Assembly: GCA_010909165.1 (NCBI GenBank)
Contig: VJWM01000389.1
Span: 1 to 23,995 of the forward strand
Direction of reading: 5' to 3'
Length of the DNA stretch: 23,995 nt
From: Anthoceros angustus
Taxonomy: Eukaryota; Plantae; Anthocerotophyta
Shown here piece after piece: positions 18,902 to 23,995 of this stretch. Position 1 is the stretch's first letter; every line of letters begins with the position of its first letter. Under the pieces are notes generated by a model. It had not been told where the DNA came from and did no database searches. It saw nothing but the letters and a program-made list of their open reading frames with translations. The position numbers were made by a program, and so were the translations under genes.

Positions 18902-20772
18902 ATGATAAATGCCTCTTCTTTCTTCTCGCTCTTCTTTACCTACGCTCAGAAAAGTTACTGACGTTTTTCTGTATTTTGCTGGGGTTTTCTTTAGGCTCTC
19001 CTCTTGAAGCTACCTATATTCTACGTTATACCACCACCGATAATGGGGAATCACTTACAGGAAATACATCGGTCTTTCTAGTATCTACAAGAAAACAATC
19101 CTGGCACAGATGATTCTATTGGCGCCTTTTTATCACTACAGATCCTACCAAGCAAGTAGGAACTCCACCTCATGGCCCTTATCCCTAGGAATTAGTCCAC
19201 CCGCCATGACTTTAAATTACCTTGAAAACAGCTCTTCAGCAATCCTTGATCTACTCCCAGGTAGTACTGTCCTCTATGCCGAATTGGTATGGGAGGAAGT
19301 TATGGTTTCTGGGACACCCCTTTACCTCCTTTACCTAATGTAGCTATCACCTGACTACTCCCCAACAAATCAGTTACACGATTACAGCCGATCCAGCCAC
19401 CAGCCAAGAAGCTATCACACCTGGTTACACGCAATCAGGAAACTATGTAAGAAGTGCCGATGTAACCTCCATTATTCAAGATGCAGATGGCCCATATATA
19501 GCAGGTGGAATATATGGAACCATAGTAGCTACAGATGACACTCATAACAGTGCCGGATGGACGTTGGCCGTCGTCTATGCCAACAACTTTAATGCTGACC
19601 CATAACATGACACTTTTGTAGGCTGTGAGCAAGCCTCGAGAACCATTAATCCTGTAGAGGTGTCGGGTTTTGTGCTCCTCCTTCCGGCGTACTCTCTGGA
19701 AGGCTTTATTAGCGCAATTGAAGGGATGTTAATAAAACAGGTGATTGCCTGCTCTTGCAAAAGTTTACCTCACTCATCGCAGCCAATTCTTTCAGGGTTA
19801 ATAATCCCTCAACAATTTTTTTGCCTCTCAAATTAACACCTGACTTCCTCTTGAGCTAGATCCTATTCATAATAAATACGTAGCCGTAGGCTCTTCTCAA
19901 TTGGATGAAAGAGGTAGCTATGGAAATTTGAACGCTGATCCCTTTAATAATCTCAATAAATCGGTGGTAGGCAGGGATATGATATTACAAGCATAGATGT
20001 TTCTCATGCTATTACCTATAATCAAAAAGGCCTATGCTTTAGGTACGACTACATCGGATGATTATACAGTCAACGCCCTGGGCTTACAGATTCAAGTAGG
20101 AGCACCCATTATAAACTCGAAAAACTGTCAACCGTGCAGTCCATAAGTTCTTCTCTTGGAGAAAGTTACTTTTCTATCCGACTTGAAAATACTGGAACAA
20201 GTGACGCCTTATCTGTAAATTTTAAGGATGTGTTGCCCACGGTCTCTATGTTGTGGGTAGTTTAAAATTGAATAGCCTACCCATTAGCCCTGATCCTGAC
20301 CTTACTCAAGGATTTTTATTGGAGATATGCTTGTCGGTCAATTAAACACGATCGAATTTGAAGCCACATTGCTAGCTATCCTCCTAACGGCAATATCTAT
20401 ACAATAAATCTTAGTTGATTATCAATTTGCAACCTGTGCGGGCAATAATTTTGACCTGTCTGCTCAATCGAATGAGGTCTCTATCTACCCTACAGATCCT
20501 CCTGTCCCTACTGCTGCCGCCTCCTTAAGCAAGTGTAAATACTTACGAACTGAGTACCCGCTAGAGATAACATGGATATCCCCTCACCTTATGTAACTCT
20601 CTATCGTGTCTATCACAAAGGGATTCTTACGGCGCAAATTCCGGCTAGCGCTCCTTTAGTCTATAAAAAATGTTGCAAATCTAAAAAATCTGCAGAAGGC
20701 TATGCAATTGTTGCAGTATATGCAGGCAATAAAGAAAGCATTCCAACTAAAATAAGGATCACTCATGAATAA
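18902..20772 (+). CDS. Secreted or surface protein: signal peptide, DUF3344-like N-domain, DUF11 (CnaB/Ig-like) domain, Pro linker, FN3-like C-terminal domain; frameshifted
   Basis: Signal peptide KLLTFFCILLGFSLGSPLEA; TYILRYTTTDNG; SIGAFITT; NSSSAILDLLPGSTVLYAELVW; YVRSADVT; AGWTLAVVY; FFASQIN; RQGYDITSIDVS; DUF11 motif IRLENTGTSDALSVNFKDVLP at ~20175-20240; DPPVP linker; C-terminal W...YRVY...YAIVAV...ES.P pattern (ORF 20572-20772). Confidence 0.8.
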
Positions 20773-21324
20773 AATTTATATAGGAATCGCATGCCTTTCC
20801 TTCTCAGCATAGGAGAGCTACATGCCTGATAGAGGAGCAGCCAATGACCTTAGAAATCCGTCTCCGGTGCGTTTATTCATGCTAATAAGCTTTAAAAACT
20901 TTATGGGAATATAGGCACAAGCTATCAAATAGAAGCTTCTCTTCCTCTCCTCCTTTTGAATATCTAAGGGTTGGAGCAATTTTGACTATTTCTCTAACCA
21001 TAGTAGAGTTCATAGAGATAGATGTTGTGGCAAAAGTAAAGTAGAGATCCTCAAATTAGCTTTGAATAAAATATATTTATCCGTTCGGGAGTTTCTCGAC
21101 GGATATGTTGGAATAGCCTAGCTTTTCAAGGATTAATGTGACTAATAAATCCTGTTGCCTATGAGAAGGTTTCAAAGTTTGCCGTAGGAGGCATATTAAA
21201 ATCAGGTATTTATTATTCAATGAGTGAACGCATCTTTATGGATGTATTCATTGACTATCTCTACCAGCCATTTTAAAAATATCGCAATGTAGGAACAGGC
21301 GCAGGATTTGGCTATAAGTTTTAA
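20765..21324 (+). CDS. Small outer-membrane beta-barrel protein (~190 aa, probably 8-stranded); frameshifted
   Basis: MNKIYIGIACL... signal peptide; amphipathic strands (SYQIEASL, KYIYPF, DGYVGI, GGILKSGIYY, IFMDVFIDYLYQP); C-terminal beta-signal GAGFGYKF-stop; ATG overlaps the previous gene (catGAATAA). Confidence 0.75.
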
Positions 21325-22290: not shown

Positions 22291-22364
22291 TCTATATTCT
22301 TAAAAACCTTGGAGGGTGCCCAGTGCTTTTAATGTTATAGTTATGAAGACATCTACCTTTTCAG

Positions 22365-22628
22365 CTATAGCTTGAAAACTGTTTACTTTTGCTGGAATGT
22401 TTTCTAGTAGATTCCGCTTTAGCTTAAAATTTAATAGTTTAGTTAGCTGCTCTATCTCTGCCGAAAGGGCTGCTAGTTGGTTGTCGCTTAAGTAGAGCGT
22501 CTGCAGCTTCGATAGCTTCCTATGCTTGCGGAAGAGTAGTTAGCTGCTTATCATATAGCCAAAGATATTGTAGCAGAGATAATCGCCTTATCTCTATTAA
22601 AATGAGGATAAGCTAGTTGTTGCTTAAG
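22365..22628 (-). pseudogene. 3' fragment of a 23-aa LRR protein gene, truncated upstream by the IS5 remnant
   Basis: LSLLQYLWLYDKQLTTLP and LSKLQTLYLSDNQLAALSAEIEQLTKLLNFKLKRNLLENIPAKV; no N-terminus because transposase sequence starts at ~22630. Confidence 0.8.
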
Positions 22629-22629
22629 C

Positions 22630-23234
22630 GCAGTTGGAGGAAATTAATCACATTAAGGAAAAATTAAGAGTTGTATTGGGAAGAGCCTGATCCTGCCTGC
22701 CCTCGTTGATAGCCAGTCTGTTAAAACAGTAGAAAGGCTCACAGGTTATGATGGGCTAAAAGGTTAAGGGGCGTAAAAGCACATTGTAGTAGATACGCAA
22801 GGTTTTTATTAACATGCTGTGGTAGGAACTGCTGACGAAAACGAGCGAGCGGGCTTAATTAAGCTGTTAGACAAATGCAAAAGTTTATTTTCAACCATCC
22901 CCAAAGTTTGGGCGGATATAGGCTATCAAGGCACTTTATTAAAGCAAACCCGCCAAAATAAATATGAGATTGGCTTTGAGATCGTTAGAAGGCCTCCTCA
23001 GGTACTGGATGCATAGGGATAAAATAGCAGAGTTTTCAAAACCATTGATTTAAGCTTTAAAGTCCTCCCCAACAGGTGGATTGTGGAAAGGACTTTTGCA
23101 TGGATTGGGCGTAATCGAAGAACTCTAAAGAGTATGAGTATCTAGCAACTACGAGTGAAAATTGGATTTATCTATCGATGATTAGACTGATGTTAAGGGT
23201 TGATGAGGTAAAGAGGGTTTTAAGATAACCTCTA
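22630..23234 (+). mobile_element. IS5-family (IS1031-like) transposase, 5'-truncated, with right IR
   Basis: [63 protein letters not shown]; stop at ~23209-23211; IR ttaagataacctc. Confidence 0.9.
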
Positions 23235-23242
23235 CAACTATT

Positions 23243-23866
23243 CTACAATTGAAAACGCTGCCTTATCTTTTCTGCAATATCTTTAAAGGATTTTCCGCTA
23301 ATTCAAGCTTGGTAATGAGACAGCCAATTTCTGCAGGAAGACTGGTTAGCTGGTTTTGATTTAAGTAAAACCATTGCAGCTCAGACAGCTGCCGATTTCT
23401 GCAGGCAGAGTGGTGAGCTGGTTTTGATTTAAGTCAAGCATTTGCAGCTGGAGACAGCTGCCCGATTTCTGAGGCAGAGCGGTGAGCTGGTTTTGATTTA
23501 AGTAAAGCGTTTGCAGCTGAGACATCTGCCCGATTTCTGCAGGCAGAGCGGTGAGCTGGTTTTGATTTAAGTAAAGCGTTTGCAGCTAGAGCCGCCAATT
23601 TCTGCAGGAAGACTGGTGAGCTGGTTTTGATTTAAGTAAAGCCATTGCAGCTAGACAGCTGCCTGATTTCTGCAGGCTGGTGCTGGTTTTGATTTAAATC
23701 AAGCGTTTGCAGACAGCTGCCCGATTTCTGCAGGCAGACTGGTGAGCTGGTTTTGATTTAAATCAAGCTCTTGCAGCTGAGACATCCGCCCTATCAGGTG
23801 AGCTGGTTTTGAGCTATGAAGCCTTGCAGCTAGACAGCTGCTGATTTCTGAGGTAAATAAGTCAAG
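23243..23866 (-). CDS. Leucine-rich repeat protein (23-aa repeats), C-terminal part; frameshifted
   Basis: At least 8 copies of LQxLxLNQNQLT(A/S/T)LPAEIGQLSQ; C-cap ELAENPLKDIAEKIRQRFQL-stop. Confidence 0.92.
23325..23866. repeat. ~69-bp tandem coding repeat underlying the LRR
   Basis: Recurring gctggttttgatttaa and ttgcagct motifs about 65-69 bp apart (spacing blurred by read indels). Confidence 0.92.
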
Positions 23867-23995
23867 CTGAATTTGTCGGCTCATTACAACGGACCTCTGT
23901 GTACATCACAGTGATTCTGAAATGCAAGCATCCTCGCCGATGACATAGTGGTACGCTTGCATCGGGAGGAACAAAGCCATTGTTACAACGAAACA

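What the first reader, a model, noticed from the sequence alone, without database searches (positions are those of the whole stretch)
18902..21324. Candidate surface-display pair: secreted DUF11 protein with an FN3-like C-terminal domain, coupled to a small outer-membrane beta-barrel
Seen: gene 1 has a Sec signal peptide, a large beta-rich N-domain, one DUF11 domain, a DPPVP linker and a ~80-aa terminal beta-sandwich-like domain (LEITW...YVTLYRVYHKG...YAIVAVYAGNKESIPTKIRI). Its stop overlaps the start of gene 2 (catGAATAA). Gene 2 is a ~190-aa signal-peptide protein with amphipathic strands ending in the Bam beta-signal GYKF. The pair is flanked by non-coding DNA on both sides. Known: autotransporters fuse passenger and a 12-strand barrel, TpsB partners are large POTRA proteins, and T11SS/Slam and T9SS PorV use separate barrels that recognise cargo C-terminal domains. 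This pair matches none of them exactly. Inference: the C-terminal domain may be a sorting or anchoring module recognised by a cognate 8-stranded barrel that tethers the passenger to the surface. I recall similar tails followed by similar barrels on unrelated passengers in environmental chlamydiae and Dependentiae, but I cannot verify that here.
Basis: partly seen in the sequence, partly recalled or inferred. Interest (0 to 1): 0.8.

Follow-up and report, generated by a model that had tools for sequence, protein, structure and literature searches.

The report
Chlamydial adhesin plus partner barrel pair
This stretch comes from a chlamydia-like bacterium caught in a plant genome assembly. It holds a badly garbled copy of a widespread, undescribed two-gene unit: a secreted adhesin-like protein ending in a small FN3 tail, next to a gene for a small outer-membrane barrel that probably holds the protein on the cell envelope.

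Summary
Gene 1 (18902-20772) has about 22 frameshifts and gene 2 (20765-21324) about 8-10. Every other gene in this Chlamydiota-like window is also broken, most likely by assembly noise.

Intact relatives confirm the architecture:
- Gene 1: signal peptide, an unclassified ~370-aa N-domain, a DUF11/CLIPPER domain, and an FN3-fold C-terminal domain (CTD).
- Gene 2: a 185-275-aa protein modelled as an 8-stranded OmpA/OmpX-like barrel (pLDDT 94).

Linkage:
- 12 of 14 CTD genes with readable context have the barrel gene adjacent. Nine share the same 8-nt ATGAATAA stop/start overlap.
- Two N-domain homologs without the CTD have no barrel nearby.
- One genome puts the same CTD and barrel on an unrelated passenger (YVTN beta-propeller plus IPT/TIG).
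- Two CTD cysteines and two barrel-loop cysteines are present or absent together.

Neither the CTD nor the barrel family has a Pfam or NCBIfam model, and I found no paper describing the pair. The best reading is a modular anchoring cassette, analogous to T9SS type-B CTD with PorP/SprF but not related to it. Binding, surface exposure and the export route are untested. No Dependentiae members were seen. The scan had not noted this on other DNA.

The parts
18902..20772 (+). Gene 1: adhesin-like passenger (about 620 aa if read through). Broken here by about 22 frameshifts and one in-frame TGA near 19841.
   Evidence: Frameshift-aware alignment to P0018 (47% id) and to the P. acanthamoebae homolog L016 (58% id). 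tblastn. phmmer hits.
18902..19011 (+). Sec-type signal peptide region (hydrophobic core, ..PLEA|TY), itself interrupted by a frameshift near 18944.
   Evidence: Aligns with the signal peptides of intact homologs.
19012..20110 (+). N-terminal beta-rich domain (~370 aa) with no Pfam or NCBIfam family. Shared with more than 100 representative proteins.
   Evidence: Modelled at high confidence in P0013. Fold not placed, because the domain was not searched alone.
20111..20494 (+). Single DUF11/CLIPPER (CnaA-like) stalk domain.
   Evidence: Weak Pfam hit in the window piece. Clear hits in homologs. The equivalent residues of the P0013 model match pilin BcpA (Z 13.0) and CLIPPER 9IFR (Z 11.3).
20495..20509 (+). 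DPPVP proline linker before the C-terminal domain.
   Evidence: PPP/PPxP linkers occupy the same place in homologs.
20510..20769 (+). C-terminal domain (CTD) with an FN3 fold and two conserved Cys (..SKC.., ..KKCC..). It ends ..RITHE.
   Evidence: 52% identical to the P0005 CTD. A local HMM finds it at the extreme C-terminus of 21 family representatives and about 12 aa from the end in 2 more. FN3 matches Z 9.6-9.7, rmsd 2.1.
20765..20772 (+). ATGAATAA overlap of the gene 1 stop with the gene 2 start (translational coupling).
   Evidence: The same 8-nt overlap is read as sequence in L013, L015 and the second L030 pair. It follows from gene coordinates in L016, L019, L023, L024 and the P0002 locus.
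20765..21324 (+). Gene 2: small outer-membrane barrel (~186 aa if read through) with a signal peptide and C-terminal ..GFGYKF. Broken by about 8-10 frameshifts and 1-2 in-frame stops.
   Evidence: Frameshift-aware alignment to P0110 (43% id) and to the L025 barrel (38% id). Family of 69 clusters. 8-stranded model at pLDDT 94.4, OmpA/OmpX/Ail/NspA-like.

Best explanation
The region is a sequencing-garbled copy of a conserved two-gene cassette of environmental Chlamydiota.

Gene 1 is a Sec-exported, adhesin-like passenger. It has an unclassified N-terminal head, a CLIPPER/DUF11 stalk, and in relatives extra CLIPPER or Big_9/cadherin-like stalk domains. It ends in a dedicated FN3-fold C-terminal domain.

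Gene 2 is translationally coupled to gene 1 through an ATGAATAA overlap. It is an 8-stranded OmpA/OmpX-like outer-membrane barrel, presumably inserted by BAM through its C-terminal aromatic signal.

Proposed mechanism (inferred): the barrel is the membrane anchor. The FN3 CTD docks on the conserved part of the barrel that should face outward (strand 1, loop 1, strand 7, loop 4, and the tip of the long strand 3-6 sheet). In most lineages the contact would be locked by disulfides between the two CTD cysteines and the two barrel-loop cysteines. This would hold the passenger on the envelope with its head pointing away from the membrane. It is in effect a split version of a C-terminally barrel-anchored fibrillar adhesin.

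Shown: the homology, the domain folds, the gene linkage, the modularity on a second passenger type, and the joint presence or absence of the four cysteines. Inferred: the physical binding, the side of the membrane, and the export route (perhaps the chlamydial type II system). The breaks in the window copy are most likely assembly errors rather than decay.
For: Intact homologs at 47-63% identity with the same architecture.

Linkage:
- The barrel gene is adjacent to 12 of 14 CTD genes, in different genomic neighbourhoods: window, L013, L015, the P0002 locus, L016, L019, L023, L024, L025, L026, and two in L030.
- Nine pairs share the identical 8-nt overlap. One has a 4-nt ATGA overlap.
- N-domain homologs without the CTD (L028, L029) have no barrel nearby.
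- L030 carries the same CTD and barrel on a YVTN propeller (TIGR02276, E 2.7e-90) plus IPT/TIG passenger with its own signal peptide.

Structure:
- Barrel model pLDDT 94.4, 8 strands. Top Foldseek matches are the OmpA TM domain, NspA, Ail, OmpX and OmpW, with TM up to 0.78.
- The CTD is FN3: Z 9.7, rmsd 2.1, 82 of 92 residues aligned.

Conservation:
- Barrel conservation peaks in strand 1/loop 1 and strand 7/loop 4. The periplasmic turns are the least conserved elements.
- All four Cys are present in 8 pairs plus the window, all absent in both L030 pairs, and the stand-alone barrel lacks both.

Context from papers: CLIPPER domains are stalks of fibrillar adhesins, one of which has a fused OmpA-like anchor (bioRxiv 10.1101/2025.04.25.650565).

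Assembly noise:
- Every gene in the window is broken, including gltX and pgk.
- About 30 single-frame shifts occur against 2-3 in-frame stops, and amino-acid identity to relatives is undiminished.
Against: - No direct test of CTD-barrel contact was possible.
- An 8-stranded barrel has no pore, so it cannot explain how a folded 600-1300-aa passenger reaches the surface.
- One CTD gene (L027) is followed by a classical 765-aa autotransporter rather than the small barrel.
- One barrel homolog (L020) has no CTD gene next to it.
- The Cys co-variation rests on only two independent losses. It could equally reflect intradomain disulfides lost together in one lineage.
- Barrel orientation is assumed from canonical OMP topology.
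- The frameshifts are not significantly enriched at homopolymers (16/30 against 39% background, p = 0.09).
Confidence: 0.55

Rival explanations
1. Periplasmic envelope-lattice reading. The passenger is never surface-exposed. It stays in the periplasm and is cross-linked by disulfides to the barrel, forming part of a cysteine-rich outer membrane complex like OmcB/OmcA/MOMP in Chlamydia.
For: DUF11 is the repeat of chlamydial OmcB, whose location was long disputed (PMC2811131). Both partners carry conserved cysteines. An 8-stranded barrel offers no export pore. Some barrels carry long N-terminal, presumably periplasmic, extensions.
Against: The barrel's periplasmic turns are its least conserved parts, and the conserved Cys sit in loops predicted to be extracellular. 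The passengers look like fibrillar adhesins, with a head plus CLIPPER/Big_9/cadherin stalks.
Confidence: 0.15
2. Operon neighbours without specific contact. The barrel is a general small OMP (structural or porin-like) that is merely co-transcribed, and the FN3 tail is only the last stalk domain.
For: FN3 and OMP_b-brl folds are both very common. A stand-alone barrel homolog exists (L020), and one CTD gene has no adjacent barrel (L027).
Against: The CTD-barrel pairing survives a complete change of passenger (L030). It keeps an exact 8-nt translational coupling across families. CTD-less homologs lack the barrel. The four Cys are present or absent together.
Confidence: 0.12
3. Dedicated translocator. 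The small barrel, alone, as an oligomer or together with BAM, exports its partner across the outer membrane. This would be a split, type-V-like secretion pathway, with the CTD as the secretion signal.
For: Gene order and coupling resemble passenger/translocator pairs. The CTD sits at the extreme C-terminus like a secretion signal. In L027 a classical autotransporter occupies the barrel's position.
Against: The model has 8 strands and the closest folds are non-pore barrels (OmpA TM, OmpX, Ail, NspA). There is no POTRA domain and no PF03797 hit in the small barrels.
Confidence: 0.08
4. The window copy is truly dead: a decayed pseudogene pair, for example chlamydial DNA integrated into the plant genome or a degenerating symbiont, rather than a noisy assembly of a live gene pair.
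For: More than 30 frame breaks in 2.4 kb. The genome is a land-plant assembly. The breaks are not significantly tied to homopolymers.
Against: All genes in the window are broken at a similar density while gene order and density stay bacterial, with no plant or transposon insertions seen. Shifts are almost all single-base, with about 10 frameshifts per in-frame stop. That ratio is the reverse of what substitution-dominated neutral decay should give (general knowledge). Identity to relatives equals that among intact relatives. Another agent attributed frameshifts elsewhere in this assembly to sequencing noise (s1-324572; unverified lead).
Confidence: 0.2

Closest known systems
T9SS type-B CTD cargo with cognate PorP/SprF-like outer-membrane barrel (Bacteroidota; e.g. 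SprB-SprF, PG1035-PorP; PMC9143113)
   Same: A C-terminal beta-sandwich domain on diverse surface proteins. A cognate barrel gene lies next to the cargo gene. In that system the barrel binds the CTD and anchors the cargo on the surface.
   Different: Different phylum, and no T9SS is known there. The CTD gives no hit to NCBIfam T9SS CTD models, and the barrel gives no PorP_SprF Pfam hit. The barrel here has 8 strands and about 160 mature residues, much smaller than PorP.
Fibrillar adhesins with CLIPPER stalks and a fused C-terminal OmpA-like anchor (Acinetobacter silvestris B9T28_05395; bioRxiv 10.1101/2025.04.25.650565, PDB 9IFR)
   Same: An N-terminal adhesive head, a CLIPPER/cadherin-like stalk, and an OmpA-type element at the membrane-proximal C-terminal end. 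The CLIPPER fold matches at Z 11.3.
   Different: Here the anchor is a separate polypeptide encoded by the next gene, and an FN3 domain takes its place at the passenger's C-terminus.
OmpX / Ail / NspA / OmpA-TM family of 8-stranded barrels
   Same: Same fold (TM 0.67-0.78), long strands that extend well beyond a membrane's thickness, and a C-terminal aromatic beta-signal.
   Different: Sequence identity is only 11-16%. Most members fall below the Pfam OMP_b-brl cut-off. None of the known ones is described as a dedicated partner of an adjacent cargo gene.
Chlamydial outer membrane complex (OmcB with DUF11 repeats, OmcA, MOMP)
   Same: Same phylum, a DUF11-containing cysteine-bearing envelope or adhesin protein, and a disulfide-linked envelope (PMC2811131).
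   Different: The partner is an 8-stranded barrel, not the OmcA lipoprotein. The passenger has a different head and an FN3 tail. Homology to OmcB beyond DUF11 was not tested.
Type V secretion (classical autotransporters, two-partner secretion)
   Same: A passenger plus an outer-membrane barrel, with adhesin-like passengers. In L027 a classical autotransporter gene sits where the small barrel usually is.
   Different: The genes are not fused. The barrel has 8 strands rather than 12 or 16. There is no POTRA domain and no PF03797 hit.

Membership tests
DUF11 / CLIPPER (PF01345) | Pfam model hit above the gathering score | tested here: inconclusive
   The window piece 20062-20262 scores 14.4 bits (cut-off 24.6), because the domain is split by frameshifts. 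Intact homologs pass: P0005 74.8 bits, P0006 34 bits. TIGR01451 E 1.6e-30.
DUF11 / CLIPPER (PF01345) | CnaA-like beta-sandwich fold | tested here: met
   P0013 model residues 379-519 match BcpA at Z 13.0 and CLIPPER 9IFR at Z 11.3, rmsd 3.0, 117 residues aligned. The isopeptide residues were not examined.
Fibronectin type III fold (CTD) | Seven-strand beta-sandwich superposable on FN3 domains | tested here: met
   Residues 521-614 of the P0013 model match human fibronectin EDB (5n48_B, 2gee_A) at Z 9.6-9.7, rmsd 2.1, 82 residues aligned. Clostridial Fn3-like 3mpc_B gives Z 9.6. There is no Pfam fn3 sequence hit.
OmpA-like 8-stranded outer-membrane barrels (OMP_b-brl PF13505 / OmpA_membrane / Opacity) | 8 antiparallel transmembrane strands, signal peptide, C-terminal aromatic residue | tested here: met
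   Model at pLDDT 94.4 with 8 strands. Foldseek matches OmpA TM, NspA, Ail, OmpX and OmpW at E 3e-9 to 2e-6. Most family members, including the window copy, end in F; a few end in I or Y.
OmpA-like 8-stranded outer-membrane barrels (OMP_b-brl PF13505 / OmpA_membrane / Opacity) | Pfam model hit above the gathering score | tested here: inconclusive
   P0112 passes (31.3 bits against 28.7). P0109 and P0110 do not (14.2 and 13.2 bits). P0115 and P0118 give no hit.
Classical autotransporter (type Va) | Passenger and 12-stranded PF03797 barrel in one polypeptide | tested here: not met
   Two separate ORFs in all intact relatives. No CTD hit inside any barrel-family protein. No PF03797 hit in the small barrels. 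8 strands.
Two-partner secretion (type Vb) | TpsB partner with POTRA domains and a 16-stranded barrel; TPS domain at the passenger N-terminus | tested here: not met
   The partner is 185-275 aa with no POTRA or ShlB hits. The passenger N-domain has no Pfam family.
T9SS type-B CTD / PorP-SprF pair | CTD matching the T9SS CTD models and a PorP_SprF-family barrel, in a T9SS-bearing organism | tested here: not met
   No NCBIfam hit for the CTD at E <= 0.1. No PorP_SprF Pfam hit for the barrels at E <= 1. Presence of T9SS genes in these genomes was not tested.
T9SS type-B CTD / PorP-SprF pair | Cognate barrel gene adjacent to the cargo gene (functional analogy) | tested here: met
   12 of 14 CTD genes have the barrel adjacent.
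T11SS / Slam | DUF560 14-stranded barrel with a TPR periplasmic domain; cargo C-terminal 8-strand barrel domain | tested here: not met
   No DUF560 hit, the barrel has 8 strands, and the cargo CTD is an FN3 sandwich.

The most novel reading that the evidence does not exclude
Environmental Chlamydiota have a previously undescribed, passenger-independent outer-membrane display system. Any Sec-exported protein given this FN3 C-terminal domain would be captured, and in most lineages disulfide-locked, by a dedicated co-translated 8-stranded barrel. That would be a new class of two-component surface anchoring or secretion, independent of types V, IX and XI.
Probability: 0.4. Interest if true: 0.8.

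Novelty: new variant of a known kind. Interest (0 to 1): 0.62.

Why it matters
Little is known about how chlamydiae outside the Chlamydiaceae build and decorate their outer membrane. These organisms are hard to manipulate genetically, so genomics supplies most of the hypotheses.

A modular tail-plus-barrel cassette would explain how adhesin-like proteins without an autotransporter domain are held on the envelope. It would give the CLIPPER/DUF11 proteins of this phylum a membrane anchor. It would also add a third, independently evolved example of a C-terminal domain recognised by a neighbouring barrel, beside T9SS type-B/PorP and Slam.

The system is small, about 90 aa of tag plus about 165 aa of barrel, so it could be tested in E. 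coli and might serve as a display scaffold.

For the scan itself: this contig is bacterial DNA inside a plant assembly and is heavily garbled, so nothing in it should be read as plant biology.

Tried and rejected
- Genome-contig scan with the 88-aa N-domain piece: 210 pattern matches, none a relative.
- Second genome-contig scan with the pgk piece, meant to find a close genome and test synteny: only 34-44% identical Pgk from unrelated phyla, so the source organism was not identified.
No reads could be laid, and I did not try another route.
- PDB sequence searches with window pieces: only chance-level streptavidin matches (E about 0.01) and nothing for the CTD.
- Word-based protein search with the P0005 CTD region found only P0005 itself.
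- The six-sequence CTD alignment was too divergent for a locus scan. A three-sequence alignment then gave only 2 metagenome loci.
- Whole-model Foldseek and VIA searches of P0013 were dominated by the CLIPPER and FN3 domains and did not place the N-domain.
- The homopolymer-enrichment test for the frameshifts was not significant, so I do not claim a specific sequencing platform.
- The promoter/terminator scan of the flanks was at chance level.
- Rfam and tRNA scans of the window found nothing.
- Rejected: the autotransporter, TPS, Slam and T9SS membership readings (see membership tests).
Full report
WHAT IS IN THE WINDOW

The 24-kb window has 32-43% G+C in 1-kb windows and no ORF longer than 136 aa. 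No rRNA, tRNA or Rfam family is found.

Stop-to-stop pieces carry clear bacterial genes in dense order:
- S41 tail-specific protease
- glutamyl-tRNA synthetase
- a TLC ATP/ADP translocase (PF03219, E 4e-34)
- phosphoglycerate kinase
- pyridoxamine-phosphate oxidase
- leucine-rich-repeat proteins
- a DDE transposase fragment

This gene set, together with the relatives found below, points to an environmental member of the Chlamydiota. Earlier notes of the scan say the genome as a whole is a land-plant (hornwort-like) assembly. The contig is therefore most simply a co-sequenced bacterium. Every gene on it is cut into pieces.

CHECK OF THE OBSERVATION

- ATG at 18902 and a signal peptide ending ..PLEA|TY
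- a long beta-rich N-terminal region and one DUF11-like segment
- DPPVP at 20495-20509
- a terminal domain ending ..KIRITHE, with TAA at 20770-20772
- gene 2 ATG at 20765, giving the ATGAATAA overlap
- gene 2 ending ..GFGYKF, with stop at 21322-21324

Neither gene is an ORF, however. A frameshift-aware protein-to-DNA alignment that I wrote needs about 22 frame changes plus one in-frame TGA in gene 1. Gene 2 needs about 8-10 frame changes plus one or two in-frame stops. Read through in that way, gene 1 aligns end to end with intact homologs at 47-58% identity, and gene 2 at 38-43%.

NOISE OR DECAY?

Three arguments favour assembly noise:
1. All genes of the window, including indispensable ones (gltX, pgk), are broken at a similar density, while gene order stays compact.
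2. The breaks are almost all single-frame shifts, roughly ten per in-frame stop. Substitution-dominated neutral decay should give at least as many stops as frameshifts (inference from general knowledge of mutation spectra).
3. Amino-acid identity of the in-frame pieces to relatives (52-63%) is the same as among the intact relatives themselves.

Another agent attributed frameshifts elsewhere in this assembly to sequencing noise (s1-324572). That is a lead, not evidence.

Two points count against certainty. The shifts are not significantly enriched at homopolymers (16/30 against 39% background, p = 0.09). I put noise at about 0.75-0.8.

INTACT RELATIVES AND DOMAIN ARCHITECTURE

phmmer with the longest in-frame piece (19339-19602) against 1.84 billion representatives gave 108 hits. 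The best were at about 60% identity.

The relatives share a signal peptide and a ~370-aa N-domain that has no Pfam or NCBIfam family. After that come:
- one or more DUF11 domains. DUF11 is now named CLIPPER, a CnaA-like domain that can carry an isopeptide bond and forms stalks of fibrillar adhesins (bioRxiv 10.1101/2025.04.25.650565).
- optional Big_9/cadherin-like repeats
- in 23 of the 108, the same ~93-aa domain. It sits at the extreme C-terminus in 21 and about 12 residues from the end in the other two.

An AlphaFold2 model of the 614-aa homolog P0013 has the same architecture as the window gene and a pLDDT of 92.1. Residues 379-519 match pilin and CLIPPER domains (BcpA Z 13.0; 9IFR Z 11.3). 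Residues 521-614 match FN3 domains (fibronectin EDB Z 9.7, rmsd 2.1, 82 residues).

Some family members outside this group end instead in a hydrophobic C-terminal tail (P0009, P0010). Others lack a signal peptide altogether. The passenger type is therefore used with different anchoring solutions.

THE BARREL

Downstream genes of intact relatives encode 185-275-aa proteins with a signal peptide and a C-terminal ..G.G.G..F.

A profile search found 69 clusters, all named 'hypothetical'. E-values run from 1e-83 to 1e-33, followed by a gap to 1e-16. Only a few reach the Pfam OMP_b-brl threshold, and NCBIfam has no model. Named sources are Parachlamydia and Rhabdochlamydiaceae. No Dependentiae member was seen, but the search was not designed to exclude them.

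The AlphaFold2 model, built on 68 sequences, has pLDDT 94.4 and pTM 0.82. It is an 8-stranded barrel with a short helix in loop 1 and long strands 3-6. Foldseek's best matches are the OmpA transmembrane domain, NspA, Ail, OmpX and OmpW, with E 3e-9 to 2e-6 and TM up to 0.78. The protein atlas gives the same picture.

LINKAGE

I could read the context of 14 CTD-bearing genes.

The barrel gene is adjacent in 12:
- the window
- L013 (Parachlamydia sp. AcF125)
- L015
- the P0002 locus (a 187-aa gene, DNA not available)
- L016 (P. acanthamoebae)
- L019, L023, L024, L025
- L026, where the barrel lies 18 nt upstream
- two pairs in L030

The flanking genes differ from locus to locus, so the pair moves as a unit.

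Nine pairs have the same 8-nt overlap ATGAATAA. I read it as sequence in the window, L013, L015 and the second L030 pair. For L016, L019, L023, L024 and the P0002 locus it follows from the gene coordinates. L025 has a 4-nt ATGA overlap, and the first full L030 pair a 67-nt gap. The overlap also explains why so many passengers end in [H/N/Y]-E.

Exceptions:
- L027: the CTD gene is followed by a 765-aa classical autotransporter (PF03797, E 4e-47).
- A third, partial CTD gene in L030 is followed by a degraded barrel start, with ATG changed to CTG.
- One barrel homolog (L020) sits next to an unrelated cytoplasmic-looking protein with weak alpha/beta-hydrolase and DUF676 hits and no CTD.
- The two N-domain homologs without the CTD that I could check (L028, L029) have no barrel within 3 kb.
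- No barrel-family protein contains a CTD, so there are no fusions.

AN UNRELATED PASSENGER

In L030, from a 2.1-Mb contig, the passengers have their own signal peptides once the start is moved upstream. They consist of eight YVTN beta-propeller repeats (TIGR02276, E 2.7e-90), an IPT/TIG domain (PF01833), and then the same CTD (local HMM E 1e-26), followed by the barrel.

CLUES TO THE MECHANISM

Barrel conservation is highest in strand 1 and the loop-1 helix (..R.AAFFP....FR.IYG..), in strand 7 and loop 4 (..F.DYLYQPVHF..), and in the terminal beta-signal strand. With canonical OMP topology, these elements other than the beta-signal strand form one patch on the outward half of the barrel. The periplasmic turns are among the least conserved parts.

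The CTD has two conserved cysteines. The barrel has two more in loops 2 and 3, at the tip of the long strand 3-6 sheet. All four are present in eight pairs and in the window. All four are absent in both L030 pairs, and the stand-alone barrel lacks both. Across the family, 42 of 63 barrels have both loop cysteines, 9 have neither and 12 have one, by a rough window count.

This fits disulfide locking between the partners in a phylum known for a disulfide-linked envelope (PMC2811131). It rests on only two independent losses, though, and intradomain disulfides would fit as well.

Strict translational coupling suggests 1:1 production.

What is not explained is how a folded passenger crosses the outer membrane, since an 8-stranded barrel has no channel. 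The type II system of chlamydiae, or a BAM-coupled route, are guesses.

COMPARISON WITH KNOWN SYSTEMS

The closest functional analogue is the T9SS type-B CTD with its neighbouring PorP/SprF-like barrel, which binds and anchors the cargo (PMC9143113). There is no sequence membership, however: the CTD gives no T9SS CTD model hit and the barrel gives no PorP_SprF hit. The barrel is also far smaller.

The pair also resembles a split version of CLIPPER fibrillar adhesins with a fused OmpA-like anchor.

It fails the defining features of classical autotransporters, two-partner secretion and Slam/T11SS (see membership tests).

Searches of the paper library for a description of this pair found none. 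That library is incomplete.

VERDICT

I classify the pair as a new variant of a known kind: a cognate-barrel anchor for a C-terminal domain, built from different, unannotated families in a different phylum. Interest 0.62.

The scan had not reported this elsewhere; the only nearby note is this same finding.

Noticed in passing
window 1-23995: The whole window is Chlamydiota-like bacterial DNA inside a land-plant assembly: S41 protease, gltX, TLC ATP/ADP translocase, pgk, pdxH, LRR proteins and a DDE transposase fragment. Every gene is broken by frequent single-base frame shifts, and the longest ORF is 136 aa.
   Followed up: partly
window 22303-23905 (- strand): Several leucine-rich-repeat protein pieces (LRR_4/LRR_8, E down to 1.5e-12), interrupted by a DDE_Tnp_1 transposase fragment at 22813-23013 (+). 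I recall LRR proteins being common in amoeba-associated chlamydiae, but did not check this.
   Followed up: no
L030:1-5600: Tandem array of three CTD-bearing YVTN-propeller/IPT genes. Two keep their 199-aa barrel gene. After the first, the barrel start is degraded (ATG changed to CTG) and the barrel is gone.
   Followed up: partly
L027:3001-8775: A CTD-bearing DUF11/Big_9 protein (P0044, 1155 aa; its first CTD cysteine is shifted) is followed 9 nt later by a 765-aa classical autotransporter (PF03797) instead of the small barrel.
   Followed up: partly
P0145, P0156, L023:5269-6093, L024:949-1632: Some barrel-family members carry a 40-180-aa low-complexity extension between the signal peptide and the barrel. 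It is K/A/P-rich repeats in P0145 and acidic in L023 and P0156. It is presumably periplasmic, and its function is unknown.
   Followed up: no
L023:1027-2235 (- strand): A 402-aa protein with a signal peptide and a long collagen-like GPT/GPQ triplet repeat, followed by a globular C-terminal domain, lies close upstream of the adhesin-barrel pair in a chlamydia-like contig.
   Followed up: no
P0009, P0010, P0023-P0055: The unclassified N-domain also occurs in proteins with other endings. Some have a hydrophobic C-terminal tail after a Cys/Gly-rich motif (P0009, P0010). Others have no signal peptide, start MPFVNRF.., and end in acidic EEE tails. The head domain is therefore much more widespread than the CTD-barrel cassette.
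   Followed up: no
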